This document shows, piece after piece, positions 5,967-46,348 of a stretch of 64,000 nt of DNA. Below the pieces are notes generated by a model that ran no database searches, was not told where the DNA came from, and saw nothing but the letters and a program-made list of their open reading frames with translations. The number at the start of each line of letters is the position of its first letter. Within the stretch, counting starts at the first letter, position 1. The translations under genes were made by a program, and so were the position numbers. Where the stretch lies: the IMG/VR virus record IMGVR_UViG_3300046808_001241, positions 124,001 to 188,000 of that record. One strand, given 5' to 3'.

Positions 5967-6815
5967 TTAAGAATAAATGGCAGTTAACCTGCCTGTCCAG
6001 TTTGCGTTGTTTACAGTTTGTGTAGAAGAAACAGTTCCTACATCTGTATATGTTAGTTTAGAAATATTCCAAGCTGGTTCGTTTTCTAAAGATCCTACGG
6101 GGGCATTTCCGCAATAAGAAACACTATAAGAACTGTATTCGACGTAGTCGTGTTTTTTTAAAGTTTGTTGAGAACTTCCCCAATTTGAGGAGTTTGTTTG
6201 AACAATAGTATAAGTGTCTTGCCAAACAGACGTAAGAGCTCTGACTTCAGTGTCTTGGCCTGCAATTCCTTCAGCAATAATTCCAGTTAACCCTGAACCG
6301 TCTCCATAAATCTTTCCAGCAGCTGTTAAGTTATTAACATATGTGAACCCGGAAAGATGAGATGTAATATTAGAACCCAGAATAAACGACTCGGAATGGT
6401 TTAATGTGTTATTGACGCCTCCTAAAATTGCTCCAAAGTCCCCTCCGGTCAATATTGTGTTATTAGAACCATTTCCTATTAATGCATAGTCTGCTTCAAT
6501 ATCATTATCCGATCCATTGATGACTGTTGAACCGGCTCCAGAGACGTCGTTGTTTACTCCTCCCAGAACTCCTGCTAAAAGTCCTGTAACTGTATTCGAC
6601 CCATATTGATAATTTGAAGAGCTTAGGCTTACATCAAGAGTATAAGGTTGTTGCTCAGCGTTTAAAAACGTTTTAACCGTGTTATTAGTAGCTTTAGTAA
6701 ACAGTTTTCCGTCTGCTGTATTGACTGCAATTTCCCCAGCCGACAACGAAGCAGTAGCAGGAACCACCCCACTGTTGGAATTTCGTTTATGAAGAATCGT
6801 CGACGGAGCAGACAT
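5967..6815 (-). CDS. Fibre protein with Mtd_N-like N-terminal domain
   Basis: TILHKRNSNSGVVPATASLSAGEIAVNTADGKLF; short GG..N beta-repeats; AATAAATA at 6822-6829. Confidence 0.7.
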   Translation of the reverse strand: MSAPSTILHKRNSNSGVVPATASLSAGEIAVNTADGKLFTKATNNTVKTFLNAEQQPYTLDVSLSSSNYQYGSNTVTGLLAGVLGGVNNDVSGAGSTVINGSDNDIEADYALIGNGSNNTILTGGDFGAILGGVNNTLNHSESFILGSNITSHLSGFTYVNNLTAAGKIYGDGSGLTGIIAEGIAGQDTEVRALTSVWQDTYTIVQTNSSNWGSSQQTLKKHDYVEYSSYSVSYCGNAPVGSLENEPAWNISKLTYTDVGTVSSTQTVNNANWTGRLTAIYS

Positions 6816-6820
6816 CTGAG

Positions 6821-6964
6821 TTATTTATTACTTTTTAATTCAGATTTACACAGAAGTTCTTGTTTGATCTGCTTAATCTTTGGCTTAACAGTGGTTACTT
6901 TTTGCAACTCCGCAGATTGAGTTGTAATAGATTTAATAAAAATGTTTTTAAAAATTTCAAACAT
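6821..6964 (-). CDS. Small 47-aa basic ORF missing from the supplied track
   Basis: MFEIFKNIFIKSITTQSAELQKVTTVKPKIKQIKQELLCKSELKSNK fills the gap exactly; AATAAGTA box at 6970-6977. Confidence 0.55.
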   Translation of the reverse strand: MFEIFKNIFIKSITTQSAELQKVTTVKPKIKQIKQELLCKSELKSNK

Positions 6965-6975
6965 AGGAATACTTA

Positions 6976-7161
6976 TTAAAAGGTACCCATGTCTGTTATG
7001 GTGTTTCCTGAAAGATTTTGAGATTCTGAAGAGCCAATATAAAGAGTTCCTCCTACCTCATTGACTGCCAACTCCCCAGGACGCAGCATTGGAGGAGGTC
7101 CTGGAGCTCCACTTACTCGTCTTTTGATTAAAATTGTGCAATACTTTCTTTGTTCTTCCAT
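6976..7161 (-). CDS. Stand-alone Mtd_N-like mini-protein
   Basis: TILIKRRVSGAPGPPPMLRPGELAVNEVGGTLYIG, close to the N-terminus of 12800..15451; ends TDMGTF. Confidence 0.7.
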   Translation of the reverse strand: MEEQRKYCTILIKRRVSGAPGPPPMLRPGELAVNEVGGTLYIGSSESQNLSGNTITDMGTF

Positions 7162-7413
7162 CTAACTACTTAAGTTTTGACTCTGGAGAGACATCATATG
7201 TTCATCTTGAAACATACTTTTGTACGGTTCATCACAATCTTCTGAGATAATCCAACCGAGTTCATTCAGAGCTTCTTCCAATGCAAGTTCGTAAGAAAGA
7301 GAGTTCAGCACAATAGTTTTAGGTGACTCGTCTTTCGAAGTTATTGTAAAAATTTTTCTTGGCATAATTGTTTTAGCTTTTTTTTGATAAGCTCTATTAA
7401 TTGTTCGTCCCAA
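7162..7413 (-). CDS. Hypothetical protein
   Basis: ORF abuts the next gene; real start may be the internal MPRKIF. Confidence 0.45.
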   Translation of the reverse strand: MGRTINRAYQKKAKTIMPRKIFTITSKDESPKTIVLNSLSYELALEEALNELGWIISEDCDEPYKSMFQDEHMMSLQSQNLSS

Positions 7414-7450
7414 AATTTAAAAATTTCTCATGAAATATTTAAGCTAATTA

Positions 7451-7730
7451 ATGTGAGACAGAAAATGTAAATACTTTAATGACGGGATTGATTACGAAGT
7501 CAAATATAAAAAAGGCATTGAACTCGAAAAAAATTGAAAAGACGAACACGAAATCGCCAAAAACCTCAATCGAGTATCGAGATTGCTTTTGTACTTAAAT
7601 ACCAGACATGTTTGATGTTCTTGTATATTGTTTAGAAGAATACGAAAAACGCTTGGATTCTAGAGACTCAATGTGTGATCTCGTAGACGATAAAAATCAA
7701 AAAGATATTAATAATATATATATGCAATAA
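7451..7730 (+). pseudogene. Probable decayed gene
   Basis: One frame reads M*DRKCKYFNDGIDYEVKYKKGIELEKN*KDEHEIAKNLNRVSRLLLYL with TGA stops; a shifted frame continues PDMFDVLVYCLEEYEKRLDSRD to TAA at 7728-7730. Confidence 0.35.
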
Positions 7731-7768
7731 AACAGCTTTCTCAAAATATTATAAAACGTTTTGATGCT

Positions 7769-7957
7769 CTAGTGAAAATCCCTTAGGTAGCTTTTAGGTT
7801 CGTCTGCAGAACCTTCAGAATCTGCAACGTCGCTTGTGCTTTCATAATCATCCTCTGCATAATGTCCATAATGTTGTTTGTATAATTCAGGAAAAAGAGT
7901 ATAGATTTCAACTCTCATGCAATATTCAGCGTCATCTTCCCATTCAAACTGTTTCAT
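7769..7957 (-). CDS. Small acidic hypothetical protein
   Basis: 62-aa ORF following the glycan operon. Confidence 0.5.
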   Translation of the reverse strand: MKQFEWEDDAEYCMRVEIYTLFPELYKQHYGHYAEDDYESTSDVADSEGSADEPKSYLRDFH

Positions 7958-7969
7958 AAATTCTATTAT

Positions 7970-8801
7970 TCACACTATATCTTCAACCTTCAAATCCCTT
8001 CCTTTAAAGTTTCTGTAGTCTAAATTAGGAAACGTTTTTGTGAAAAAATTAAACTGTCTTGGGTCTACGCTATCGAACCCTGGATACTCTAAATTCGCAA
8101 TAGGATAAACAGACCTGTCTATGTCCAATATTTTGTATAACCTGTTTATCGTCTCTGTAAAATAACATTCATTCATATGATTATGAGAAACACATAATAA
8201 TTTGTTTTGAAATTCTTTTTCTATATAATCACACATATTAATCCGATTATCATATAAATCAGATTCTTCTTTATATCTTTGCCTGTTTTCGTTTCTATAT
8301 TTTTGATAATTTAGATTAAATGGATATTCATTTTTCAATATTGCAGCAAGAGCAGGATCCTCGGATTTTTGGAGATAGTTTATTATTTCTTCGGCATTAT
8401 TTGCTTTAGTTTTAACGTATTCTATGTACGGAGAAAATCGCCTTGCATCTGTTAAATGAGCAAAAAACCGAGTATCCGGAATACAAATTTTTAAACCGGT
8501 TGCTATTGTATCATGTAAGTAGGTTGTTTTGAGTTCATCTATTACTGATGTTCCAGAGTGATCTTGAAATACAAAAATCTCAGCCTCTCTAATTTTAGAA
8601 TGAATACAGTCCTTATAGATTTCTTGAGCTTCTCTGTTTTCAGGAGACCACACAGCAAAGACACCATGTTCGTTCCAAAAAGGTTTCAAACCACAGTCCT
8701 TGCAAAGTTGAACGTCAAATTTATCCGACAATTTTAATCTAAAATGTTTGGCGACAACTCCAATTTGGCAGTTGCCATAAAATAATATCTTTTTTTTTCA
8801 T
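7970..8801 (-). CDS. WcbI-like polysaccharide biosynthesis protein, frameshifted at an A9 tract after its ATG
   Basis: ATG at 8801-8799 then 9 A (8798-8790); with 8 A it reads MKKKILFYGNCQIGVVAKHF and joins ORF 7970..8731. GNCQ, FVFQ, I.IP...F and HNH resemble WcbI-family motifs. Confidence 0.65.
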
Positions 8802-8804
8802 TGG

Positions 8805-8990
8805 TTAATTATAATTTGCCAGCTTGCTGATTTGACTTTCCAAAAAAATTATATGCTGGATAAAATCATATTTTTCGCATATAATTGCTTCGAGTTCTTG
8901 TCTTAATTTTATATTTTGATTTTCAATAGACAAACTGTCTATTTCCTCAAATAGTAATTTATCGATTACTGGTGAATCTCCAAAGGTCAT
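8805..8990 (-). CDS. Small coiled-coil hypothetical protein
   Basis: 61-aa ORF overlapping the upstream stop by 4 nt. Confidence 0.5.
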   Translation of the reverse strand: MTFGDSPVIDKLLFEEIDSLSIENQNIKLRQELEAIICEKYDFIQHIIFLESQISKLANYN

Positions 8991-9727
8991 TTCGTATATT
9001 GTTTGATGATGTCACATCTTGCTACATCATCAAATTTTATATCGGTTTTGTTGCAAAATTCCTTGCAAGCGTAGTGGGAATAGTGAACAAGCGGTTTGTT
9101 CCAAAAATCATGTCTAGGAGGATCGGAAATAAAATTTCTATCTCTTGTCATTTTAATATCTTCGTCTTTGTCTATTATTTTGTCGTGATAATACAAACAG
9201 AAGAACTCTTGATCATGAAAATGTCTGAATTTTCGTTCTTTATACATTTCAATATATTTTTTTATGTTTTGTTCCGTAACACTAATAAATTTTTTGCACA
9301 AGGTTAAAAACTGCGATGGGGTTCCGCTAGCGAAACACGGACAACAATTATCCATTAGATGCAATGTGTTTTCTGGTTCGATTGGATTAAAATTGTGATT
9401 TATCACATCATAATCGCTTACATAAAATTTTTCCTCAATCTGAGTAGAATAAGCTAACCATCGAAGCCAGCAACTTAAACCATATTTTTTTAAAGGCATT
9501 CCTGCAATTTCTTGATGAAGTCTGGTTGTTTCTGCAACAAATTCTTTATAAAAATCTGCTTTCTCAGCATCCTTCCTTGTTAGTACAATTGGCTCAAACC
9601 CGTGATCTTTCCAAGAATTCTCCCAAAGAGCAACCAACTCATCTTGATTTTGGAAATTAATGTTTTCGTAATATGTATAGATTTTCATTTCAGTATGTGT
9701 ATTTAAACGTTTTAATGTCCCATTCAA
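8987..9727 (-). CDS. Putative GT-A fold glycosyltransferase (real start probably MKIY at 9688)
   Basis: W..SW..HG..P.VL, CWLRWLAY, DxD motif YVSDYDVIN, later HDQE. Confidence 0.6.
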   Translation of the reverse strand: MNGTLKRLNTHTEMKIYTYYENINFQNQDELVALWENSWKDHGFEPIVLTRKDAEKADFYKEFVAETTRLHQEIAGMPLKKYGLSCWLRWLAYSTQIEEKFYVSDYDVINHNFNPIEPENTLHLMDNCCPCFASGTPSQFLTLCKKFISVTEQNIKKYIEMYKERKFRHFHDQEFFCLYYHDKIIDKDEDIKMTRDRNFISDPPRHDFWNKPLVHYSHYACKEFCNKTDIKFDDVARCDIIKQYTK

Positions 9728-10325
9728 AAAGATTATAAATTAAATTTTTTGTTTCTTCGTCGTAAAAATCCTTGTAGTCTTTTCTAACTATATATTTCTC
9801 CGAATTGTTTAAGTGTGGAACATCTATCTCTGAAGTAAATTGTAGCTTGTCTTTAATCAAAGAAAATTCTTCTTTTAAGTTTTCTAACTTGATGACACAA
9901 TCCAAAGAAAACGTGTCTTCTAATACCATGTAGGGGTTGGTCGTTAGCTCAGAATTAAAATTTTTCTTAAAATATTTAAAAGCAAATTCTTTAAACGTCA
10001 TTTGTTTAGAATCTTTGACGTATTTGGGCATTTTAAATTGATCTGCTCTTTTAAGAAAATATTCATATTCTTTGTGCCTAGTATGATTGTAAAAAGAGAC
10101 GGCTCGATCCCAAGGATTACGTATTACAGAAAACTTAAAAAACTCGCCTGGATCAAGTCCAAACGTTTTGATCTTGTCTACATGCATTTTTAAAGATCCA
10201 TGTTTAAACTTATGAACTTGTGGATATTTTTCCCTCAATTTTAAAAACCCTAACATCTCTTCAATGGATGTACCTCCGCATTTAGGAGGGTGAGTAAAAA
10301 TAATCTTTTTGTTTAAGTCGTACAT
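9690..10325 (-). CDS. Sulfotransferase (Sulfotransfer_2/carbohydrate sulfotransferase-like)
   Basis: 5'-PSB motif IFTHPPKCGGTSIE and 3'-PB motif FSVIRNPWDRAVSFY. Confidence 0.85.
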   Translation of the reverse strand: MYDLNKKIIFTHPPKCGGTSIEEMLGFLKLREKYPQVHKFKHGSLKMHVDKIKTFGLDPGEFFKFSVIRNPWDRAVSFYNHTRHKEYEYFLKRADQFKMPKYVKDSKQMTFKEFAFKYFKKNFNSELTTNPYMVLEDTFSLDCVIKLENLKEEFSLIKDKLQFTSEIDVPHLNNSEKYIVRKDYKDFYDEETKNLIYNLFEWDIKTFKYTY

Positions 10326-11195
10326 TTATCTTATAAATGTTTTAAACAAAAGCTCGTCCCAATACGTTCTGTTTTTAAATGTTGTCTGTGCTTCTAATGA
10401 GAGTTGTTCGAAATTTATTTTCTTGTTTGATGTTTCGTTTTTTGTTAAAGTATCCCAAGCGCGTCTTTCAATTTGAGCAATATCAAAGCCGTAGCATACT
10501 AAAAACGTTTCTTGAAGTGCTTTGTCCGTTTCCTTAATATGAAACACGTGAAATTGTTTTAACATTTCCACTGTTTGTTGATATAAATCTTCGTTTATAG
10601 GAGTTGAATTGTTAGTGTTATTTAGATTACGAATCAACCAACTGTCTTCCAGTTCTTCTGATAACACATAATCCTCAAACGTGAGCGATTTAATCTTTCC
10701 GTGAGTTCGTTCATGAGCCGACAGATCAGACGTAATGTAGTTGTAAAATGACTGTGCTCTTAAAAACGGTTCTCTTAAAATTATAAACTGATGTAAATCA
10801 TAATTTTTTGCTAGCTTTGTTATTTCATCTCTACAACTAAAACCACGAGCTTCGATAATAATTCCAAACAAAAAAACATTTGCTAGCAGATTTTCGTTTA
10901 AATTATTAATATCAATATCCCATTCTGTATTAGAATGTTTTTTGTCAAAAACATTAAGAGTTTCACAAAAATAATTTGGATCCCCAATTAAAAATTTTGC
11001 AACTATAAATTCGTTGCTTTTAATCTGTAAACACTTGATAGAATCTTGATTAAGAGAGAAATTTTTTAGCCAATCTGTATAAATTCTTCTATAATACCTA
11101 AAGGACATTAACATCCAATCAGAAACATATGTTCCTGCATTTTTTGGTATATGATAAAAGACTGGTATTTTACGCTTTTGGATTGCAAGTTTCAT
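10326..11195 (-). CDS. Second sulfotransferase
   Basis: VFYHIPKNAGTYV and IILREPFLRAQSFYNY. Confidence 0.8.
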   Translation of the reverse strand: MKLAIQKRKIPVFYHIPKNAGTYVSDWMLMSFRYYRRIYTDWLKNFSLNQDSIKCLQIKSNEFIVAKFLIGDPNYFCETLNVFDKKHSNTEWDIDINNLNENLLANVFLFGIIIEARGFSCRDEITKLAKNYDLHQFIILREPFLRAQSFYNYITSDLSAHERTHGKIKSLTFEDYVLSEELEDSWLIRNLNNTNNSTPINEDLYQQTVEMLKQFHVFHIKETDKALQETFLVCYGFDIAQIERRAWDTLTKNETSNKKINFEQLSLEAQTTFKNRTYWDELLFKTFIR

Positions 11196-11982
11196 TTAAC
11201 CAGTAGTTGTATTCTGGGCACGTGACAATATCTGCTAAAGAAGTATCTTTACAACCGTGATGAACTACTGCCTCTGGATAGATCGGTTCATCATATGTTA
11301 CTACTCCATTCAAATCTCCATTATCCTCGCCTTTAATCATATAAGGATTTGTGTGAATTTTATAATTTAATGTTCTGAATCCTTGCTGAATAAGTTTTGT
11401 ATCAGCAGTATGCGGCATTATTTCCCATTGTGTAACGACATCAAAAGCAGTTGGGAGCTGATCAACATATTGCCAGATAGTGCAAATTTCATCGACTCTT
11501 GGAGGATATACGGCAGTTCCTTGCAAGTGTTCTGCAATATTAATTATATATTCATCTTTTGTTACAGTAGTTGTATTTTGAATAGTACCAAAACATGGTT
11601 TGCCACATTTGTGATATGCTTCTTCTAAAACATCTGCCCATTTTGGTTTTAATGCTATACAATCAAGCTCCATCCAAAACCATGGCTGCTTGTTATCGAT
11701 TTCTTTTAAATATTCGATTGTATATTTCCAATAACAATTTGGACCTTGTGGCCAGCCACTTGTCCCATCTCCTTGTTTAAACAAATGCAGATTTGCTTTA
11801 TTAGGAAATTGATCTTTGATTAGATCAAAAACAGAACGAGCAAAGTGCTTGTCAGAAGGACGAGACACGACAAGCAATTCGTGATTCGTATATAAACCGA
11901 AGTGTCTTAGGCTCTTTATGAAACCTAAGACACTTAAAGGTTTTTGAAATTCGTAAGATGAAACAGGAACAATTATAAGCAT
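11170..11982 (-). CDS. Putative glycosyltransferase-like protein
   Basis: GWPQGPN..W and WFWMELDC (DxD-like) motifs; heads the operon with AATAAATA at 11988-11995. Confidence 0.5.
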   Translation of the reverse strand: MLIIVPVSSYEFQKPLSVLGFIKSLRHFGLYTNHELLVVSRPSDKHFARSVFDLIKDQFPNKANLHLFKQGDGTSGWPQGPNCYWKYTIEYLKEIDNKQPWFWMELDCIALKPKWADVLEEAYHKCGKPCFGTIQNTTTVTKDEYIINIAEHLQGTAVYPPRVDEICTIWQYVDQLPTAFDVVTQWEIMPHTADTKLIQQGFRTLNYKIHTNPYMIKGEDNGDLNGVVTYDEPIYPEAVVHHGCKDTSLADIVTCPEYNYWLNETCNPKA

Positions 11983-12009
11983 GGGCTTATTTATTTTCCT
12001 TGTTTTAAA

Positions 12010-12711
12010 TTACAATTCGATTCCTGCTCCAGAATTATAAAGAGAAGAAACTTCTCCTAATGTAAGAGCCCTATTCCAGATACCAACTGCGTCAACCAAT
12101 CCTTTTCCATTTTGGCCGTCTCCTGCTCCTAAAACGAAGCTCGAGTCTTGAAATGCGTCCCCTGTGTTTTCCGTATGAAAGAGCTGTCCGTCTACATATA
12201 TTTTAACTTCCCCGATTGTGGAATCATGAGAAAGAACAGCATGCACCCAAACGTTCGAAGCTAAACTTCTCGAAGGTTCATTTCCTGTGGAAGGAAGATA
12301 AAAAGCCAAACGTCCGCCAGTATAACTATCAGCATAAACAGACGTTCCGAATGCTTTTACTACACACAAAGGAAACTCTTCAATTCCGTTTCTATTAATC
12401 CAGCAAGAATATGAGCCAGATGAGCCTGTTACAATAGAGGCAATTTGAGCTTCTAGTGTTTGATTTCCTTGTAGATTTGCTGCATTTCCGATCTTTCCAG
12501 AAGAGAAAGTTACTCCACCATTATTGGTAAGAGTATTTCCGTTTCCAGAAGAATCTGAAGTGTCGCTGAGTCTATAAAAAGCCTGAAGACCGCTCGATAA
12601 GCCGCCTCCTCCACCGCCTCCACCATAGCCATAGCTAGAGGAAACTACTCGCATTTTGCCAGTAGATGTAAATTTAACTTTTGCTGCAGATCGTATATTT
12701 AAAAGTGCCAT
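12010..12711 (-). CDS. LamG/ConA-like domain protein
   Basis: LQAFYRLSDTSDSSGNGNTLTN, WVHAVL, IYVDG, GLVDAVGIWNRALT.EV..LYN. Confidence 0.85.
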   Translation of the reverse strand: MALLNIRSAAKVKFTSTGKMRVVSSSYGYGGGGGGGGLSSGLQAFYRLSDTSDSSGNGNTLTNNGGVTFSSGKIGNAANLQGNQTLEAQIASIVTGSSGSYSCWINRNGIEEFPLCVVKAFGTSVYADSYTGGRLAFYLPSTGNEPSRSLASNVWVHAVLSHDSTIGEVKIYVDGQLFHTENTGDAFQDSSFVLGAGDGQNGKGLVDAVGIWNRALTLGEVSSLYNSGAGIEL

Positions 12712-12799: not shown

Positions 12800-15451
12800 T
12801 TAGAAGCTTCCGCCATCGAGGACGAATCCAAAAATGGTTGAAGATGTTCCGTTACCAGAAAGATCTGAGGTAAATGTAACACCGTTAGAAACATTCAATG
12901 TTCCTGTGAATGTGCCATTACGAGCAAAGATGTCTTCTGTTGCAGAGATTGAACCAACAACTGTTAACTCTTCGTTAGGAGTTTCAGTGCCGATACCAAC
13001 CAATCCGCCATCAACAAACAACGTAGCATCACCGGTACCGCCGCCAATTTCTAAACCACCAGCAGCAGTAATTGTGCCGGAAGCAGAAATGTTGCTAGCT
13101 ACGGTAAGTTCGCCAGTAAGATCCCCACCCGAAAGAGGAAGGAAATTAGCGTGAACGTAGTTGGTTGCACTTGCTGCGTTTGAATCGATTGCAGCTGAAA
13201 GAGCAGCAACGTCAGAAACGCGAGCAGACTCTTCGGCGTCAATAGCAGCATCAAGGGTTGCAGATACTGAAGCAACTGTTGAGTTTAAGGTAGCAACTTC
13301 TGAAGCAATTGAGCTTTCAAGAGCAGCAACTTCTGAGTCAACAGATGCTGACAATGAATCGATTTTCGAATCAAGGGTAGCTGAAACAGATGCTAATTCT
13401 GTAGTGGCAGCATTCGCAAGGTTGGTGATGGCGTTGTTTAAATCGCCGTCAGCAGCTTGGAAGGCACTTACAATTTCAGTTAAGGAATCAAGGGCAGCAG
13501 GGTCAACATTGCTAAGAATGCTGTTGATTTGACCTTGGAGATCACCAGAAACTGCAACTACTGTTGAGTTAAGGGTGCTTACTTCTGAATCAATCTTTGA
13601 GTCAAGAGCAGCAGAAACAGATTGAACTGTTGAGTTCAATGTAGCAACTTCTGAAGCAATTGAGCTTTCAAGAGCAGTAACTTCTGAGTCAACAGAAGCT
13701 GAAAGGCTTGAAACTCGACCATCAACGTAGCTCTTGGTTGTAGCAGCATTAGCAGCAACAGGCTCAGCAACAAAGACTTGGCCAGTAGCAGAGATGTCAC
13801 CGACAACTGTTAACTCTTCATTAGGAGTTTCAGTGCCAATACCAACCATACCACCACCAACATACAATGTAGCGTCACCAGCACCACCAGCACCAATTTC
13901 CAACCCACCAGCAGCAGTAATTGTGCCGGAAGCTGAGACGTTGCCTGTTACAGTAACTCCGCCAGTAAGATCTCCACCCGAAAGAGGGAGGAAATTAGCA
14001 TGGCTGTAGTCTTTACCAGCTTGGTCACCAGCAGCGAGATCGCTTGCGAGTGTAGCTGAAACAGAGGCCAATGTGGTTTCAATAGCAGAGTCTGCAGCAA
14101 TACGTGCAGCTTCTTCAGTTGAAATATCACCTTTGAGCTCAGCTGAGAGAGCTTCGATTGCAGCAGTTGAGTTAGTGTCAATAGCGTCAATCTGGGATTG
14201 GAGATCGCTAGAAACGGAAACAACTGTTGATTCGAGAGCAGAGTCAGCAGCAATTCTTGCAGCCTCTTCAGCGGCAATAGCAGCTTCGAGAGTTGAAGAA
14301 ACAGAAACAACTGTTGAATTTAGAGTTGAAACTTCTGAATCAATTTTTGAATCAAGACTAGCTGAAACAGATGCTAAGTTTGTTGAAGCACTGTTAGCTA
14401 ATGAAGTGATAGCACCATTAAGGTCGCTGTCAGCAGCTTGGAAAGCTGAGACGATTTCAGTCAATGAATCAAGAGCAGCAGGATCAACGTTCGAAAGAAC
14501 ATTGTCAATTTGGCCTTGAAGATTGCTTGAAACTGAAGCAACTGTTGTGTTTAATATAGCAACTTCTGAAGCAATTGTGCCTTCAAGAGTTGTAACTTCT
14601 GAGTCAATCTTGGAATCAAGAGTTGCTGAAACAGAAGCCATTGTGGACTCGATAGCAGAATCAGCAGCAATACGAGCAGCCTCTTCAGCAGCAATTGCTG
14701 CTTCGAGAGTCGATGAAACTGAAACGACTGTTGAGTTTAATGTCGAAACTTCTGAATCAATTTTTGAATCAAGACTAGCTGAAACCGAAGCCATGGTGGT
14801 TTCGATTGCAGAGTCAGCAGCAATACGAGCAGCTTCTTCAGAGTCGATGGCTGAATCAAGAGTAGCTGAAACTGAAGCCAGAGTTGTTTCAATGGCTGAG
14901 TCGGCAGCAATACGAGCAGCTTCTTCTGCGTCGATAGCAGCAGAGAGAGCAGCAACGTCAGCGTTGGCTCCTGATTCTAAGTTGTCGATCTGAGTTTGAA
15001 GATCGCTTGAAACTGAAACAACTGTGCTATTAATGCTAGCTAAGGTGTTTGTGAGGTTCGAAGCAAAGTTTTCATCATCACCAAGGGCAGAAGCCAACTC
15101 GTTAAGAGTATTAAGGGCTTCTGGAGCCATGTCGATAACTGCAGCAATTTCGCTAGTAATTCTAGCATCCAAAGTGGAAGAAACTGACTGAATAGTTGTA
15201 TTCAGAGTTTCAACTTCAGATGTAACTCTTGAATCAAGAGTAGAAATTTGTGATTGGAGATCACCAGTAAGCGAAGCAACCGATGAGATTGTCGCAAAAT
15301 GGCCTTCACCACCGATAGGTATTACACCGGCTTGTGAGCCGTAGTATAATACTGAATCAACTTCGTTGAATGCAAGTTCACCGCCTGATAGGGCACCGGG
15401 AGCACCAGCAGCACCAGTCAAACGACGTTTAATAAGGATTGTGTTGTACAT
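12800..15451 (-). CDS. Long fibre protein: Mtd_N-like N-terminus, A/S-rich coiled-coil repeats, two VGIGTETP modules, C-terminal DGGSF
   Basis: TILIKRRLTG.AGAP..LSGGELAFNEVD; APEALNTL.ELA.ALGDD.NF; repeated AEEAARIAADSAIE; two copies of HANFLPLSGGDLTG...VGIGTETPNEELTVVG. Confidence 0.8.
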   Translation of the reverse strand: MYNTILIKRRLTGAAGAPGALSGGELAFNEVDSVLYYGSQAGVIPIGGEGHFATISSVASLTGDLQSQISTLDSRVTSEVETLNTTIQSVSSTLDARITSEIAAVIDMAPEALNTLNELASALGDDENFASNLTNTLASINSTVVSVSSDLQTQIDNLESGANADVAALSAAIDAEEAARIAADSAIETTLASVSATLDSAIDSEEAARIAADSAIETTMASVSASLDSKIDSEVSTLNSTVVSVSSTLEAAIAAEEAARIAADSAIESTMASVSATLDSKIDSEVTTLEGTIASEVAILNTTVASVSSNLQGQIDNVLSNVDPAALDSLTEIVSAFQAADSDLNGAITSLANSASTNLASVSASLDSKIDSEVSTLNSTVVSVSSTLEAAIAAEEAARIAADSALESTVVSVSSDLQSQIDAIDTNSTAAIEALSAELKGDISTEEAARIAADSAIETTLASVSATLASDLAAGDQAGKDYSHANFLPLSGGDLTGGVTVTGNVSASGTITAAGGLEIGAGGAGDATLYVGGGMVGIGTETPNEELTVVGDISATGQVFVAEPVAANAATTKSYVDGRVSSLSASVDSEVTALESSIASEVATLNSTVQSVSAALDSKIDSEVSTLNSTVVAVSGDLQGQINSILSNVDPAALDSLTEIVSAFQAADGDLNNAITNLANAATTELASVSATLDSKIDSLSASVDSEVAALESSIASEVATLNSTVASVSATLDAAIDAEESARVSDVAALSAAIDSNAASATNYVHANFLPLSGGDLTGELTVASNISASGTITAAGGLEIGGGTGDATLFVDGGLVGIGTETPNEELTVVGSISATEDIFARNGTFTGTLNVSNGVTFTSDLSGNGTSSTIFGFVLDGGSF

Positions 15452-36700: not shown

Positions 36701-37004
36701 GAGTTCCATAAGCACTCGGAAGCTGAGTAAAAATCAAAACATCTCGAAAGATGTAATCAACATCAACATCCGTTTGATCGGTTAATAAAAACCCTTCGTC
36801 CGTCCAAGCTGATAAACCAACTCTATAAACTCCAGGAAATCCATATGTAGCTGTGACAGAAGGAGTGTTATATTCAAATAATCCATTTCCTAGATCCCAT
36901 GAAAATTGAGTATATTCGGCTGGAAATTCTGCTGTGTATATGAAATCTGTTGCATATACATTGCCTTTTTGAGATTCCGGAGTAACTGTGAAATAGTTAG
37001 GCAT
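33720..37004 (-). CDS. Baseplate-associated protein with PKD domain and beta-propeller
   Basis: FSWDLGNG...TYGFPGVYRVGL; repeated ISIDRFSNIWISL, INPENNVWVA, LDRSNNLWVTH. Confidence 0.65.
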   Translation of the reverse strand: MPNYFTVTPESQKGNVYATDFIYTAEFPAEYTQFSWDLGNGLFEYNTPSVTATYGFPGVYRVGLSAWTDEGFLLTDQTDVDVDYIFRDVLIFTQLPSAYGTPSVKSDSPFTIELTSSKIDQPLSIVLQAFNTNSVPSYAVPEKWEFLVPRWRFVDAETDQDLDGPIVLKTNPIYRNNKVVAVSGSASFYYVDDLASGGGCPLLLAATLSTERFTYPPESLRYPYYSYSNSEVARAVISWQINDAIPTRLKVTENYLSDIHPIKWSNVPIPVMITCEFDPTLLDEFGNASTQPSKVLSYPRTNELGGVNKVKLVLSAEGGSLIPEDYYTVEVDGTSYNSSEAPLYFKAFDEQDNTTSGYLFTTITPLSPLSSSVVVAVSTIAANQETGSSTLAFSFPDGYPIYANVYVSHPNVSTINRIDIVTYSSTICGNIQYYKDLGILVEGSASYVSVPVLTAANLANYQLSGTSNVYGMAFDPIQNKLYATDADQDVLYVLNGGLGINQTIPISSYTGDDYNVPSHISIDRFSNIWISLYSREVLLKLDSSLNLVLSATPNTTLGLSAEGSMLVSPPIVETDSNNDAWACYSHTISSALIKFDGDTGAELFRATSLPLTSVPISLTINPENNVWVACRDSNKIQLHSGTDGTLLKTIEGAIRPSYIMLDRSNNLWVTHGYNFLSKYNNTTETFTHYKFYGATKSFEEVSGYTPEDIHKAYYENEIWGGLTVDVFDRVWVVDSEENVLFVFKTSDPFGSLNTFELIPTANTNYVVIGGTNYISALPEEKVRSAQAGGDWSGNRWYQKYSGSYSSLPVRGSSTPFNVYDLNNSFNIAKVNEEFDCAGYFKSLALPEILKENPILFDEFLSAVAGDGILTKEDIGRVAYERIANFVQTHGDFETAEITQLLSFAEQLSVPANIYGTDFPVEVSRLINLFSVPKHRLRGQVVYETDLNKNIGPVLSEASFVSAGQYIFAKDRIYSDKYQLVYVAPLSAGNILIDIQNERDILTINNMSIELPSPNLKYQLSAIQVEGLREPIFDNYYFFEYNEEQIGYKGNIINWDSDFTTVDYTLSSYEEWYGDNGLVETMFNNILTKRLISDN

Positions 37005-38815
37005 TAAATGACTTTATCTGTTTCTTGTTCCAAGACTTCGATTTGCGAAAAAACACTCTGTAAGTTATCGTAATACACAAATTCAAAATCTTTCATTTCT
37101 ATATCATTGACAATCGATTGTTTGTCTAAATCCGGATACGAAGGATTCCACATAAACAAAGAAAGTCCATTGAACGTTTCGTCTGTATCCAACCTTCTTG
37201 TAATAATTTTCGAAACTCCATCAACTGCTAGAATACTTTTAGCTAAAGAGCTGTATTCAAAAAGACCTCCAAGAGTCGCATTTGTAGGATTGAAGAAGTC
37301 TTTAAAGATCGTTTCTACTTCTGATGCAATAGATCTAGTGGATCTTTTATTGTTCGTTGAACGGATAATTTCCAATCTACAAAAATCTTTATCAGAAACA
37401 ACTACTTCGTCATTAGTTTTAACACCAATGGATACTGCTTTAAACACTGGATCTAAAAACGTAATTTCAGAAGTAAGAGTCTTGAGCGAATCAATGTTTG
37501 ATTTAATGATTTCTTTTTGAGCAGGCAAAAGGTACTTTAATGTTGATTGCTGACTAACTTTTGGAACACAGCAAATATAAACGTTATTGAAATTACAGCT
37601 ATCTGCATAAGCAATTTGATTCAACAAAATCTGCCTAAATGAAGTTGGAGAAACTTGTATGTCATTAAAATATTTTAAATAATCGCTGGTATAATCCCAG
37701 TTTGAAAACACTCTTACGTCGTTAATAAAGTTGGAGAAGTTTGTTCTAATGAAGGTTTCGTAGTCTTCTTTTGTTACTAAGCGATATTGGCTCTTGAAGT
37801 TTGCAGGAGCATTTTTTCTAATATCATCTGCTGTTTCAATATCTTTTGGAACGGTTGAGCCCACAACATTATTGAAAAACAAATTGTTTAATTGGTTTGT
37901 GTTTAAGTATGTGAACTGTTCGTTGTTTACTTCAGTCAGTAACGGTCCAAATGTTGAAGTATTAAAGATTGACTTCGTTCCAGTAGAAATTTCCCCAGGT
38001 CCGATAATTCCTTGCTGGCCAGAGCTTTGCAAATAATAAATTGCTACTTGATCGTTTTCTTCAAGCTTTCTTCCATTAATACCATCCCCGAAAGTAACTT
38101 CATAAAGAAGATCAGAATTTAATCGTTTTTCGAACGATCTGGAAAAAGCTTGTTCCGTATAAAGTGTTGGAACGTTTGCATATTGCACCCAACGATTTTG
38201 ACGAGACTCATACACATATACATCGATGTTAAAGTGATCCACAAAAATGTTTGAAACGTTAATTGTAACAACTTCATTAGGATCTCCGCTAGCTCTATAT
38301 AATGGATTTTCACGATAAATTCCTTGGTATAAAAGTTTTTTGTTTGTTAAGTCTGTAAGTTCTACTGCTTGCGGGTCTGTTGATATTGCAAACGAGACGT
38401 CTTCGTTAAACGAAAATGGAACTCCAGCAACAGTCAAATAGGTATAACGAGGTATTGTATAAAATCCTGCATTAAGATTTTGTGCCGAACATTGAAAAGC
38501 AAGAGTCGAAGTCTGATAGCCAATTGGTTTGTAGTCAAGAAGCTTTACAATTCTGCTAATGTTTTCATATAACTGAGCTTCAGTAAAGATCGACTCCGTA
38601 CTAGTTCTGTTAAGATAGAACATCAAAGTGTTAAAAGAATATGAAATAATATCAATAATAGCAGCTAGATTTGAACCAATATAGTTTTGATCGGTATAGA
38701 TGCCCTGATCATTCATTCTTTGAATAATCAAATTACGAAGCGATATAGCATCAAATGCTGCGTAGCTATCTTTAGGTAGCGGATATTCGTTTGTTGGTAC
38801 TATTTCGTTGGCCAT
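37004..38815 (-). CDS. gp6: Baseplate wedge subunit, T4 gp6-like
   Basis: FD..SLRNLI...TD.NY.GSNL...IDI.SY....MFYLN...ES....AQL.ENI....KLL.YKP; YEVTFGDGI.GRKL; ETADDIRKNAP..F..Q.R.VT.EDYE. Confidence 0.92.
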   Translation of the reverse strand: MANEIVPTNEYPLPKDSYAAFDAISLRNLIIQRMNDQGIYTDQNYIGSNLAAIIDIISYSFNTLMFYLNRTSTESIFTEAQLYENISRIVKLLDYKPIGYQTSTLAFQCSAQNLNAGFYTIPRYTYLTVAGVPFSFNEDVSFAISTDPQAVELTDLTNKKLLYQGIYRENPLYRASGDPNEVVTINVSNIFVDHFNIDVYVYESRQNRWVQYANVPTLYTEQAFSRSFEKRLNSDLLYEVTFGDGINGRKLEENDQVAIYYLQSSGQQGIIGPGEISTGTKSIFNTSTFGPLLTEVNNEQFTYLNTNQLNNLFFNNVVGSTVPKDIETADDIRKNAPANFKSQYRLVTKEDYETFIRTNFSNFINDVRVFSNWDYTSDYLKYFNDIQVSPTSFRQILLNQIAYADSCNFNNVYICCVPKVSQQSTLKYLLPAQKEIIKSNIDSLKTLTSEITFLDPVFKAVSIGVKTNDEVVVSDKDFCRLEIIRSTNNKRSTRSIASEVETIFKDFFNPTNATLGGLFEYSSLAKSILAVDGVSKIITRRLDTDETFNGLSLFMWNPSYPDLDKQSIVNDIEMKDFEFVYYDNLQSVFSQIEVLEQETDKVI

Positions 38816-41196: not shown

Positions 41197-42900
41197 ATGT
41201 TTACACGCGTATTTGATACAAAGTCTTTTATCGATAAATCCAAACAGAAATTTAGTTCCAAATTTAGTTACGAGGATACGGTATATACAAAATCAACAAA
41301 TAGACTTAACGTAATTTGCAGCATTCACGGCAAAGTCGAAATTCTTCCAGGAGTGCACTTGTCTGGAGCGGGATGCCCGAGCTGTTCGAGGGCGTTAAAT
41401 GGCTTGAGTCATAGAATGGACACTGAAACGTTTATTAAAAGAGCTCAAGCTAAACATAATAATTTTTACAATTACGACAAAGCAACATTTCAAGGTAGTT
41501 TAAAAAACCTAATAGTCACTTGTCCTGTGCACGGAGATTTCGCAATTCAAGCAAGTCGACATATAAATAACGGAGCTGGTTGCTCAAAGTGTGGTTTTAT
41601 TCGTCGTGTAAAAAAATGCACTACCCCACTCGATGTGTTTTTAGAAAAGACATCCAAAAAACCAAATTTCGAAAATTATGATTTCAGTTTAGTTAACTTT
41701 AAAAATAAAAAAGAATGGGTTACCGTTATTTGTAAAAAGCACGGAGAGTATAAAACTAAACCTAGATATATTGATAATAGTGCGTTTTTCGGTTGTAGTC
41801 AGTGCAAATGCGAAAGCAGAACTTTCACTACTGATACTTTTATCGAAAAAGCTAAACAAATACATGCCGAAAGATATCTTTATGATAGAGTCGAATATAA
41901 AGATTCACACACAGAGGTGACACTAATCTGTAAAACTCACGGAGATTATATTTGCAAACCTTATGTACACTTGGCGGGAGGAGGCTTTTGTCCAAGCTGC
42001 ACTAACAATGGTGTAAGTTCTTATGAGAGAGAAATAAAATTATTTTTGCAACAAAACGGCATCAGCATAGAATCTTCTTTTAGAGGATTTGACGGATTGA
42101 AGGAAATAGATTTAATTTGTCACAACAAAAAAATAGGAATTGAAGTTAATGGGTTATATTGGCACTGTGACTTATACAAAGAAAAAAACTTTCATAAACA
42201 CAAAACGGAAACTTTGTTAAAGCAGGGATATCGACTAATTCATATATTTGAAGACAGCTGGCTTCTCAAAAAAGACGTTTGTTTGTCAATTTTATTGAAT
42301 GCGTTTAATAAAACTCCCAATAAAATTTACGCAAGAAAGTGTGAACTAAAACTAATTTCAGATAAAGAGTCAAAACATTTTTTAAATGCAAACCACGTAC
42401 AAGGTTCTTGCGTTTCTAAAATAAGATATGGTTTATTCTATAATAACGAGCTTGTATCGGTTATGACCTTCGGCTCTAACAGAAAAAATTTGGGCAATAA
42501 ATCAAAACCAAATGAATACGAACTACTAAGGTTTTGTAACAAAACCTACACCAATGTCGTTGGAGGAGCTTCTAAACTGTTTGCTTCTTTCATCAAACAA
42601 CACAACCCTCGGAAAATAACAAGCTATTGCAATAGAAGTATCGGAACGGGAAATCTATACAAGCAGCTTGGATTTCAGTTTTTATACAATACGCCTCCAA
42701 ACTATTTTTATGTCAGAGGAAGTACAAGATTGCCGAGATTTAAATTTCGAAAAGATGTGTTAATTAAACAAGGACATGATAAAAACAAAACAGAAGCTTG
42801 CATTATGAAGGAATTAGGGTATAATAGAATTTATGACTGTGGAAGCATGAAATTTGAATGGACAAATAATCAATCATTTTCCGAAGATGACTTGTTTTAA
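41197..42900 (+). mobile_element. Free-standing homing endonuclease (C-x2-HG...C-x2-C zinc repeats, PD-(D/E)XK/Vsr-like core, Hef-like C-terminal domain)
   Basis: Four C..HG repeats with GCxxC; EIDL...KIGIEVNGLYWH; ARKC...FLN.NH.QG...YELLRFC...GGASKL...LY..LGF. Confidence 0.8.
42865..42900 (+). repeat. 36-nt direct repeat, copy 2 (end of endonuclease ORF)
   Basis: aataatcaatcattttccgaagatgacttgttttaa, encoding the same NNQSFSEDDLF*. Confidence 0.95.
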
Positions 42901-46307: not shown

Positions 46308-46348
46308 AGCCCTTCTGAGCTACCAACTTGGAAGGGCTCTTTTTTTTT
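46308..46348 (+). terminator. Rho-independent terminator
   Basis: AGCCCTTC...GAAGGGCT stem followed by a T9 run. Confidence 0.8.

What the first reader, a model, noticed from the sequence alone, without database searches (positions are those of the whole stretch)
8729..8807. A9 homopolymer immediately after ATG puts the WcbI-like gene out of frame: candidate phase-variation switch
The ATG at 8801 lies 3 nt after the upstream stop and is followed by 9 A (8798-8790), giving a 20-aa dead-end peptide. With 8 A the frame reads MKKKILFYGNCQIGVVAKHFRLKLSDKF and runs into the 253-aa ORF, restoring the family-typical GNCQ motif. The GNCQ frame has a TGA just upstream and no ATG start of its own. Slipped-strand ON/OFF switching of a glycan-modifying gene is well known in bacteria and would be notable in a phage; transcriptional slippage on A9 could also give partial expression.
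Basis: partly seen in the sequence, partly recalled or inferred. Interest (0 to 1): 0.65.

Follow-up and report, generated by a model that had tools for sequence, protein, structure and literature searches.

The report
Poly-A frameshift in phage WcbI-like gene
A run of nine A's straight after the start codon really does knock a sugar-modifying (WcbI-family) gene of a 217-kb freshwater phage out of frame; the site is a slippage hot-spot that is ON in some related phages and OFF in others, a kind of switch recently shown in phage T2, but whether it flips within this phage's population could not be measured.

Summary
On the minus strand, ATG 8801-8799 is followed by A9 (8798-8790). That frame ends after 20 aa. 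The next frame holds a 275-codon ORF whose A8 reading begins MKKKILFYGNCQ, the family's consensus N-terminus.

A9 is not an assembly slip. Two JGI assemblies from different samples and two Logan assemblies (47x, 30x) all carry it. A8/T8 runs inside long genes elsewhere in the genome are in frame.

The protein belongs to the WcbI family by profile and fold. The stretch cut off carries strand beta1 and the Cys that touches acetyl-CoA in WcbI, so the called 253-aa TTG product is probably dead.

Among about 33 distinct related loci, the only broken copies are the window (A9) and L002 (A11). One other uninterrupted tract (A10) is in frame. All 30 short or interrupted tracts are in frame (Fisher P=0.006). 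The broken ORF shows no decay.

Best reading: a recent, in principle reversible slipped-strand OFF allele at a hypermutable tract, probably leaky through RNA-polymerase slippage. Switching within the population is untested, because only contigs were available. Most relatives interrupt the tract with AAG, which argues against an evolved switch. The closest precedent is the A9 contingency locus in T2 agt. I file it as a new member of a known kind, of moderate interest.

The parts
8790..8798 (-). A9 homopolymer (T9 on the + strand), the slippery tract. A8 or A11 would put the ATG in frame with the long ORF.
   Evidence: sequence; one of only 5 runs of 9 or more in 217 kb. A9 in 2 JGI and 2 Logan assemblies.
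8799..8801 (-). ATG start codon, 3 nt after the TAA of the upstream ORF. It overlaps TGA 8800-8798 of the long ORF's frame (an ATGA arrangement).
   Evidence: Homologous ATG in L004/L006, L023, L025, L027 and L028.
8739..8801 (-). 20-aa dead-end reading frame produced by the A9 allele, stop TAG 8741-8739.
7970..8797 (-). Full WcbI-family reading frame (275 codons plus stop), intact apart from the missing in-frame start. GNCQ motif at 8776-8765 (Cys10 at 8770-8768); invariant His207 at 8179-8177.
   Evidence: P0001; 36 homologues, nearest 78% identical. (alignment A1). (WcbI profile and fold); scores 3rd of 36 against a family profile built without it.
7970..8731 (-). 253-aa ORF from the internal TTG, as gene callers annotate it. 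It lacks beta1 and the Cys of GNCQ.
   Evidence: (P0003); the missing 22 residues hold strand 2-7 and the residue aligned with WcbI Cys14.
8805..8990 (-). Upstream 61-aa ORF, syntenic in relatives. It ends 3 nt before the ATG, and its own start overlaps the stop of the 246-aa ORF (ATGA), so this is a tightly packed operon.
   Evidence: Same 61-63-aa gene before the WcbI-like gene in L004, L024 and L027.
8987..12711 (-). Context. 246-aa ORF of unknown function (8987-9727); Sulfotransfer_2 (9690-10325); a second ORF with a PAPS-loop-like FYHIPKNAGT motif (10326-11195; my reading of the motif, no family hit); 270-aa ORF (11170-11982); Laminin_G_3 lectin-fold protein (12010-12711).
   Evidence: Relatives also pair the gene with Sulfotransfer_2 and a weak Gly_transf_sug hit.
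12800..15451 (-). 883-aa tail fibre protein upstream in the same gene string. It places the cluster in the tail-fibre/baseplate module.
   Evidence: PHROG tail fibre families; baseplate wedge at 37004-38815.

Best explanation
A genuine slipped-strand insertion of one A (A8 to A9) in the Lys-coding poly-A tract directly after the start codon has switched off, at the DNA level, a WcbI-family gene. The gene is a putative acetyl-CoA-dependent polysaccharide-modifying enzyme in the tail-fibre/sulfotransferase module of a 217-kb freshwater tailed phage.

Shown: A9 is the consensus in two samples. The frame is broken. The lost N-terminus carries beta1 and the putative catalytic Cys. The same tract is independently out of frame in a second lineage (A11) and in frame in a third (A10). 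The ORF is otherwise undegraded.

Inferred: a run of 8-11 A slips readily during replication, so the site behaves as a simple de facto contingency locus, as the A9 tract in T2 agt does. One replication slip back to A8 restores MKKKILFYGNCQ. In the OFF state a minority of transcripts with 8 or 11 A, made by RNA-polymerase slippage on the T9 template, would still give some full-length enzyme. The hypermutability need not be an evolved adaptation. It follows from a conserved MKKK N-terminus in an AT-rich genome once the usual AAG interruption is lost.
For: - Sequence and frames.
- Not an artefact: the IMG/VR-JGI record and a second JGI assembly from another sample are identical over 4,762 bp, both with A9. 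Logan contigs of X1 (depth 46.9) and X2 (29.7) have no gap or mismatch over the tract. A8/T8 runs inside ORFs of 180-739 codons are all in frame.
- Family: 27 of 36 homologues hit PF18588. The A1 profile hits WcbI 4bqn at E 4.7e-4, with YGNCQ on YGSCQ and NH on His201. The AF2 model has pLDDT 95.6 and its top Foldseek hit is 4bqn (E 3.6e-6, TM 0.57). In WcbI, Cys14 and His201 hold the acetyl-CoA thioester (PMC4104973).
- Hot-spot: 2 of 3 lineages with 9 or more uninterrupted A are out of frame, against 0 of 30 with shorter or interrupted tracts, P=0.0057. A low-depth relative in run X3 has one letter fewer at the tract.
- No decay: P0001 ranks 3rd of 36 against a profile built without it, and its 23 N-terminal residues are 78-87% identical to the nearest full-length relatives.
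- Precedents: T2 agt A9 reverts about 1000 times more often than a SNP. RNA-polymerase slippage is efficient on 9 A/T (PMC5009743). A poly-A tract rescues an interrupted tssM gene (PMC4256274).
Against: No measurement of tract-length heterogeneity within a sample was possible, because Logan contigs drop minor variants. The two samples that carry A9 are near-clonal and may come from one project, so their agreement says little about stability. Most relatives keep the tract interrupted (the middle Lys codon is AAG in 7 of 10 MKKK loci), and this genome avoids A9 in coding DNA (0 of 13 KKK triplets against 4.9 expected). That fits a deleterious accident as well as it fits a switch. There is only one such tract in the genome, whereas organisms that use contingency loci usually have several. 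The loci were found largely through protein searches, which under-sample broken copies. E. coli RNA polymerase is reported to slip less on A runs than on T runs (PMC6260861 abstract), and the polymerase that transcribes this gene is unknown.
Confidence: 0.55

Rival explanations
1. Plain pseudogenisation. This is a one-off loss-of-function slip in a dispensable accessory gene, on its way to decay, with no meaningful reversion or regulatory role.
For: A9 is the consensus in both samples, and the phage is abundant (30-47x) without an in-frame copy. Relatives mostly protect the site with AAG. The genome selects against such tracts. Accessory glycan genes are often lost.
Against: The 275-codon frame has no stop in a 37% GC genome. 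All 7 invariant and 33 near-invariant family positions are kept, and the profile score equals that of intact relatives. The untranslated N-terminal 22 codons are as conserved as the rest. So the loss is either very recent or not complete. A run of 9 A is physically prone to revert (T2 agt).
Confidence: 0.22
2. Standing recoding. The one-extra-A arrangement is the normal expressed state. Full-length enzyme is made at a set low level by transcriptional slippage (-1 or +2 A) or by +1 ribosomal shifting/sliding on the A run. This works as an attenuator, as with C. rodentium tssM or the Blochmannia poly-A frameshifts.
For: Two separate lineages (window A9, L002 A11) share the same geometry: CAATGA followed by an A run, with exactly one A too many. 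The ORF and its N-terminus are pristine. A9/T9 runs slip efficiently in bacteria, and tssM is a precedent.
Against: About 31 of 33 related loci are simply in frame, so the arrangement is not conserved. No stimulatory RNA structure is present (z = +0.88). Two cases of '+1' are expected by chance half the time. No RNA data cover the tract.
Confidence: 0.12
3. The N-terminally truncated 253-aa protein from TTG 8731 is the functional product. It could be reached by re-initiation 7 nt after the stop of the 20-aa ORF, so the gene would not be off.
For: TTG 8731 lies 7 nt downstream of TAG 8741-8739 in a tightly coupled operon. Gene callers annotate this ORF.
Against: It would lack strand beta1 (residues 2-7 of the model) of the central sheet, and also Cys10, which aligns with the CoA-bonding Cys14 of WcbI. 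All 33 homologues that cover that column keep YGNC. No Shine-Dalgarno-like sequence precedes the TTG. In two relatives called from an internal start (L003, L004) the full frame is open upstream.
Confidence: 0.05
4. Sequencing or assembly error: the true genome has A8.
For: Homopolymers are the classic site of indel errors. All four assemblies may derive from the same two samples, since X1 and X2 are flagged as possible sources.
Against: Four assemblies made by two pipelines agree at 30-47x. At least six A8/T8 runs inside long ORFs are in frame. Contig sizes of up to 97 kb at k-mer depth 47 point to accurate short reads. A second lineage shows the same kind of break.
Confidence: 0.03

Closest known systems
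Contingency locus in coliphage T2 agt (A9 at bases 288-296; Gomez, Barrick & Waters, bioRxiv 10.1101/2025.10.21.683753)
   Same: A lytic tailed phage, a run of nine A inside a non-essential sugar-transfer or sugar-modification gene, and +/-1 slips that turn the gene off and on.
   Different: In T2, reversibility (about 1000 times a SNP), read-level heterogeneity (about 7e-4) and the trade-off (TgvAB against McrBC) were all measured. None of these is measured here. Here the tract sits at codons 2-4 rather than mid-gene, the natural consensus is the OFF state, and the enzyme acts on an unknown glycan, not on DNA.
Bacterial phase-variable glycan genes with 5'-proximal homopolymers (Campylobacter poly-G capsule/LOS genes, Haemophilus and Neisseria LOS genes). 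Campylobacter phages are also said to carry hypermutable poly-G tracts. Both points are from my own knowledge and were not checked here.
   Same: The repeat lies at the 5' end of the ORF, so that OFF yields only a tiny peptide. The target is a surface-glycan-modifying enzyme. One tract length in three is ON.
   Different: Those genomes carry many such tracts, kept long by selection. This genome has a single coding tract, at the lower length limit, and relatives mostly interrupt it.
Frameshifts rescued by transcriptional slippage on poly-A (C. rodentium tssM A11, PMC4256274; T. thermophilus dnaX and the endosymbionts Buchnera and Blochmannia, reviewed in PMC5009743)
   Same: An out-of-frame gene with an intact downstream ORF and a run of 9 or more A/T at the break. 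Slippage products with -1 or +2 A would restore the frame.
   Different: In those cases the out-of-frame state is conserved among relatives and mRNA heterogeneity was shown. Here it is rare among relatives and RNA evidence is lacking.
WcbI of Burkholderia pseudomallei (PF18588; PDB 4bqn/4bqo; PMC4104973)
   Same: Same two-lobe fold. N-terminal beta1 ends in a G-x-C-Q motif, and a conserved N-H motif corresponds to His201. The gene sits among polysaccharide-modification genes.
   Different: About 15% sequence identity. P0001 alone does not reach the Pfam threshold. The gene is viral and about 35 residues shorter. WcbI's own catalytic activity was never demonstrated.

Membership tests
WcbI (PF18588) | Significant match to the Pfam model | tested here: inconclusive
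   P0001 alone gives no hit even at E<=1. 27 of its 36-member homologue set do match, best E 9.7e-13, and those members are linked to P0001 at E 1e-35 to 1e-85.
WcbI (PF18588) | Fold: N-terminal four-stranded parallel-sheet lobe plus a helical C-terminal lobe, as in 4bqn | tested here: met
   The AF2 model has pLDDT 95.6 and pTM 0.92. The Foldseek top three hits are 4bqn/4bqo (E 3.6e-6, prob 1.00, TM 0.57/0.51); the next hit has E 0.02.
WcbI (PF18588) | Cys at the C-terminal end of beta1 and the His that contact the acetyl-CoA thioester (Cys14, His201) | tested here: met
   The profile alignment puts YGNCQ on YGSCQ and the invariant NH on N200-H201. C10 is nearly invariant and H207 invariant in A1. 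Roles are taken from PMC4104973.
WcbI (PF18588) | Binds CoA/acetyl-CoA and acts in polysaccharide modification | not testable with these tools
   This needs protein biochemistry. Only the neighbourhood (Sulfotransfer_2; a weak Gly_transf_sug hit in a relative) hints at glycan chemistry.
Simple-sequence contingency locus (phase variation) | Repeat tract in the ORF whose length changes shift the reading frame | tested here: met
   A9 follows the ATG. A8 or A11 gives ON; A9 or A10 gives OFF.
Simple-sequence contingency locus (phase variation) | Both ON and OFF tract lengths occur among related genomes at the same site | tested here: met
   Window A9 is OFF, L002 A11 is OFF and L025/L026 A10 is ON. 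The X3 relative has one letter fewer, which reads ON. These are different lineages (68-79% protein identity), not variants of one strain.
Simple-sequence contingency locus (phase variation) | High-frequency reversible switching, seen as length heterogeneity within a population | not testable with these tools
   All four runs are kept as contigs only, and contigs drop rare variants.
Simple-sequence contingency locus (phase variation) | Uninterrupted tract maintained by selection (conserved or over-represented) | tested here: not met
   Only 3 of about 33 distinct loci have 9 or more uninterrupted A; the rest use AAG or CAA interruptions. The genome has 0 AAAAAAAAA among 13 KKK triplets, against 4.9 expected.
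Programmed transcriptional slippage / recoding | Slippery run of 9 or more A/T at the frame junction | tested here: met
   A9. The threshold is taken from PMC5009743.
Programmed transcriptional slippage / recoding | Out-of-frame arrangement conserved among homologues | tested here: not met
   2 of about 33 loci.
Programmed transcriptional slippage / recoding | Heterogeneous mRNA tract length | not testable with these tools
   Metatranscriptome run X4 has contigs at 6963-7151, 7630-7791, 9142-9332 and 11294-11474, but none over 8790-8798.

The most novel reading that the evidence does not exclude
The tract is a working bet-hedging switch of an uncultivated jumbo phage. Lineages that lost the AAG interruption toggle a tail-fibre-module glycan acetyltransferase ON and OFF, or hold it at a low slippage-set level. 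This would alter a modification of the virion or of the infected cell's surface polysaccharide, trading host range or superinfection exclusion against a host defence. It would be the first natural-population example of a phage contingency locus caught in the OFF state.
Probability: 0.2. Interest if true: 0.6.

Novelty: new member of a known kind. Interest (0 to 1): 0.35.

Why it matters
If the tract switches within populations, it would carry the laboratory finding of phage contingency loci (T2, T4) over to an uncultivated environmental jumbo phage, and to a glycan-modifying gene beside the tail fibres, where ON/OFF states could change host interaction. It also matters for annotation. The gene is called as a 253-aa ORF from an internal TTG that lacks the probable catalytic Cys, and two intact relatives were likewise called from internal starts. 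Start-proximal MKKK tracts in AT-rich phages are therefore a recurrent source of miscalled or silently broken genes. As it stands, this is one well-documented natural frameshift allele at a slippery site. That is useful but not surprising.

Tried and rejected
- **Direct family scans of P0001** (Pfam, PHROGs, NCBIfam) gave no hit. Family membership was reached only through homologues, a profile and the fold.
- **Megablast of 7000-11000 against GenBank phages** found no match.
- **Single-protein scan of IMG/VR** found no relative. The alignment-based scan gave 1. A DNA pattern on the conserved ILFYGNCQ coding stretch gave 15, all in frame.
- **Reads:** every run offered is kept as Logan contigs, so A8:A9 ratios cannot be counted. 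The RNA run does not cover the tract.
- **Tract-stability control:** I tried to compare the other long homopolymers between the two near-identical assemblies, but the second record is not held.
- **Frameshift-stimulating RNA structure** around the tract: none (z = +0.88).
- **Another genetic code** to read through TGA 8800-8798: not invoked. TGA ends neighbouring genes (for example the ATGA overlap at 8990-8987), and nothing in the genome suggests recoding.
- **Non-canonical start** (ATA 8788-8786) in the long frame: considered but without support.
- **dN/dS since the frameshift:** not attempted, because the nearest available relative is only 78% identical in protein, so synonymous sites would be saturated.
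- **tRNA scan of the window:** none found.

Full report
**1. The observation**

Read on the minus strand, the upstream 61-aa ORF ends with TAA at 8807-8805. Three bases later comes ATG 8801-8799, followed by nine A (8798-8790) and a G. The ATG frame gives a 20-residue peptide and a stop (8801-8739). The frame one base further on (window:7970-8797:-, P0001) is open for 275 codons and begins KKKILFYGNCQ. It has TGA 8800-8798 immediately upstream, and its first common start codon is the TTG at 8731, which gives the 253-aa ORF that gene callers report. With eight A the ATG reads MKKKILFYGNCQ... straight into this ORF.

**2. Is A9 real?**

The window is bases 124001-188000 of a 217,182-bp IMG/VR virus record with terminal repeats. 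The same 253-aa product is recorded on a second JGI assembly from another sample (217,042 bp). The 4,762 bp around the gene are identical in the two assemblies, and both have A9.

Logan's independent assemblies of two freshwater metagenome runs (X1, k-mer depth 46.9; X2, 29.7; different samples and studies) span the tract with no mismatch and no gap. These runs are flagged as possible sources of the record, so in effect there are two samples and two assembly pipelines.

The genome holds only five homopolymers of 9 or more bases. The other four are intergenic: terminator-like hairpins, or leaders upstream of start codons. At least six A8/T8 runs lie inside ORFs of 180-739 codons and are in frame; a +/-1 change would truncate them. 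There is therefore no sign of systematic homopolymer error, and I put assembly error at about 3%.

**3. What the gene is**

P0001 alone hits nothing in Pfam, PHROGs or NCBIfam. The word-based protein search returned 36 relatives of 266-296 aa, the nearest 78% identical, most covering the whole repaired protein. 27 of the 36 sequences in alignment A1 match PF18588 (WcbI), best E 9.7e-13.

A profile of A1 finds the crystal structure of B. pseudomallei WcbI (4bqn, E 4.7e-4). It aligns kkkiLFYGNCq with RKKYSVYGSCQ, and the invariant NH motif with N200-H201. An AlphaFold model built with A1 is confident (pLDDT 95.6, pTM 0.92; strand 2-7, helix 10-22). Its three best Foldseek matches are the WcbI entries (E 3.6e-6, probability 1.00, TM 0.57/0.51), and the next match has E 0.02.

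In WcbI, Cys14 sits at the C-terminal end of beta1. It forms a disulfide with CoA and, together with His201, holds the carbonyl of acetyl-CoA. WcbI is a putative acetyltransferase whose activity was not demonstrated (PMC4104973). So 'WcbI-like' is supported by fold and by the two key residues, though not by a direct Pfam hit.

The consequence for the finding is direct. The 22 residues lost when translation starts at TTG 8731 include beta1 of the central sheet and Cys10, so the annotated 253-aa product is very unlikely to work.

**4. Context**

The virus is a tailed phage: baseplate wedge subunit at 37004-38815, virion structural protein at 48281-50095, and tail-fibre families for the 883-aa ORF at 12800-15451. 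The WcbI-like gene lies in a minus-strand gene string between tail-fibre-like ORFs. Its neighbours are:
- a Sulfotransfer_2 gene (9690-10325, E 6.6e-14);
- a second ORF with a PAPS-loop-like motif (10326-11195; my reading of the motif, no family hit);
- a Laminin_G_3 lectin-fold protein (12010-12711);
- several unknowns.

Relatives show the same pairing with Sulfotransfer_2 and, once, a weak glycosyltransferase hit. This is a glycan-modification cassette inside the tail-fibre module. Its substrate is unknown.

**5. The tract in relatives**

I read the DNA at the start of the gene in about 33 distinct loci. The Lys-rich N-terminus is conserved, but it is usually encoded with an interruption:
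- ATG AAA AAG AAR: the closest syntenic relative L004/L006, and L011, L012, L020, L023, L027, L028;
- ATG AAG AAG AAA: L024;
- ATG AAA CAA AAA: L005/L018/L044 and L015/L016 (L008's second copy has ATG AAA AAA CAA AAA);
- shorter N-termini in distant members, including contigs binned as giant-virus MAGs.

Long uninterrupted tracts occur in three lineages:
- the window, A9, out of frame;
- L002, A11, out of frame, with the same CAATGA-plus-A-run geometry and again exactly one A too many;
- L025/L026, A10, in frame, seen in two runs.

So 2 of 3 long tracts are OFF, against 0 of 30 short or interrupted ones (Fisher P = 0.0057). One caveat applies: protein-based retrieval under-samples broken copies.

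In run X3, a low-depth contig of a relative (10 mismatches in 120 nt) has one letter fewer at the tract and no substitution listed inside it, which reads as an in-frame 8-letter tract. L002 and L003 encode the same 270-aa protein and are identical downstream of the tract but unrelated upstream, so a recombination junction lies at the tract. Two intact relatives (L003, L004) had been called from internal starts, although their full frames are open.

**6. Is the broken copy decaying?**

No. P0001 keeps all 7 invariant and 33 near-invariant residues of the family. It ranks third of 36 against a profile built without it (460 bits, against 463 for the best). Its first 23 residues, which are untranslated in the A9 allele, are 78-87% identical to the nearest full-length relatives, at least as conserved as the remainder (71-79%). 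A 275-codon open frame in a 37% GC genome would not persist long without selection. So the slip is recent, or reversible, or the frame is still being read at some level.

**7. Is the tract selected for?**

The evidence points the other way:
- This genome uses AAA for 72% of Lys codons. None of its 13 KKK triplets in ORFs of 200 or more codons is AAAAAAAAA, against 4.9 expected. The only AAAAAAAAG is presumably this gene; I did not check its position.
- Runs of 8 or more A or T are mostly fewer than composition predicts.
- Most relatives interrupt the tract.

Long A runs thus look disfavoured. The window's lineage appears to have lost the AAG interruption (relative to L004: one G-to-A change plus one extra A) and then slipped.

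**8. Mechanism**

Shown:
- a real A9 allele that breaks the frame and removes the part of the enzyme holding the putative catalytic Cys;
- recurrence of breaks at this tract in independent lineages.

Inferred from established knowledge:
- Runs of 8-11 A undergo slipped-strand mispairing at high rates. In phage T2, an A9 tract at bases 288-296 of agt gains and loses one A, reverts about 1000 times more often than a point mutation, and shows about 7e-4 variant reads (bioRxiv 10.1101/2025.10.21.683753).
- Bacterial RNA polymerase slips efficiently on runs of nine A or T, mostly adding bases, and E. coli has a single AAA_AAA_AAA in its coding sequence (PMC5009743). A poly-A run rescues the interrupted tssM gene of C. 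rodentium (PMC4256274).
- Here, transcripts with 8 A, or with 11 A (giving MKKKKILFYGNCQ), would restore the frame, so some leaky expression in the OFF state is likely.
- E. coli polymerase is reported to slip less on A runs than on T runs, and T7 polymerase far more than the cellular enzyme (PMC6260861 abstract). Which polymerase transcribes this gene is unknown.
- No stable RNA structure accompanies the tract (z = +0.88).

**9. Verdict**

| Reading | Weight |
|---|---|
| Genuine, recent slipped-strand OFF allele at a hypermutable, in principle reversible tract (a de facto simple contingency locus, probably leaky) | about 0.55 |
| Non-reverting pseudogenisation | 0.22 |
| Standing slippage-dependent expression | 0.12 |
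| Functional truncated product from TTG 8731 | 0.05 |
| Assembly error | 0.03 |

The anatomy, the family and the hot-spot behaviour hold. Within-population switching and RNA slippage remain untested, and the comparative data argue against an evolved switch.

With the T2 agt A9 locus as precedent, this is a new member of a known kind. Its points of interest are the start-proximal position, the natural OFF consensus in an abundant uncultivated jumbo phage, and the location in a tail-fibre-linked glycan cassette. Interest 0.35.

Noticed in passing
window 12800-15451, 6976-7161, 5967-6815 (all minus strand): Three ORFs share a tail-fibre N-terminal motif (ILIKRR...GELA.NE). The 883-aa one has long Ala-rich internal repeats and PHROG tail-fibre hits. 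The 282-aa one has a sub-threshold hit to Mtd_N, the N-terminal domain of the major tropism determinant (E 0.08). The 61-aa one looks like an orphan N-terminal fragment.
   Followed up: partly
window 46340-46348 and its flanks: A T9/A9 run abuts a GC-rich hairpin (GAGCCCTTC...GAAGGGCTT) and looks like a bidirectional terminator. It is followed by GGGTTCGACTCC, which resembles a tRNA T-arm. ARAGORN finds no tRNA anywhere in the window. Genome position 98997 has the same A9 + hairpin + T-run layout.
   Followed up: partly
L002 3901-4803, L003 1070-1825, L008 357 and 1494: Relatives carry two WcbI-like paralogues, adjacent in L002/L003. Each starts with a short N-terminus followed by (I/V)(I/L/F)FYGNCQ. 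The window's phage has only the one copy in this region.
   Followed up: no
L033, L036, L038, L042, L043, L045 (IMG/VR GVMAG contigs): The same ILFYGNCQ-type genes occur on contigs binned as giant-virus MAGs, all in frame with very short N-termini (MN, MKN, MKK). The family is widespread in aquatic viruses, or else these bins include phage contigs.
   Followed up: no
L003 126-982, L004 1634-2467: The gene callers behind the public protein sets started these intact relatives at an internal Met after GNCQ, although the full frame with MKQERKK... or MKKK... is open upstream. Start-site miscalls in this family hide the catalytic Cys.
   Followed up: yes
L002 about 2960-2980 against L003 about 120-150: Two contigs encode an identical 270-aa stretch and are identical downstream of the A tract but unrelated upstream, so a recombination (or chimeric-assembly) junction coincides with the tract.
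   Followed up: partly
window 41197-42900 (+): A 567-aa ORF with very strong HNH/homing-endonuclease PHROG hits (phrog_559, E 3.5e-111), and a weaker Mom-like DNA-modification match, sits among structural genes.
   Followed up: no
window 6963-7151, 7630-7791, 9142-9332, 11294-11474: A freshwater metatranscriptome run from a fourth study (X4) holds contigs 100% identical to these four stretches. The phage, or its RNA, is present there. None of the contigs lies on the WcbI-like ORF, and DNA carry-over cannot be excluded.
   Followed up: partly
G000 genome 208417-208425 and 213952-213961 (outside the window): An A9 and a T10 run lie about 17-35 nt upstream of two paralogous genes that both begin MS(M/L)IKLLGKTNIQGKTIFDTG. 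Homopolymers in the leaders of a repeated gene family are possible promoter or leader length-variation sites.
   Followed up: no
window 8987-9727 (minus): The two JGI annotations of identical DNA call this ORF with different starts (246 against 233 aa). The 246-aa version overlaps the end of the sulfotransferase gene by 38 nt.
   Followed up: no
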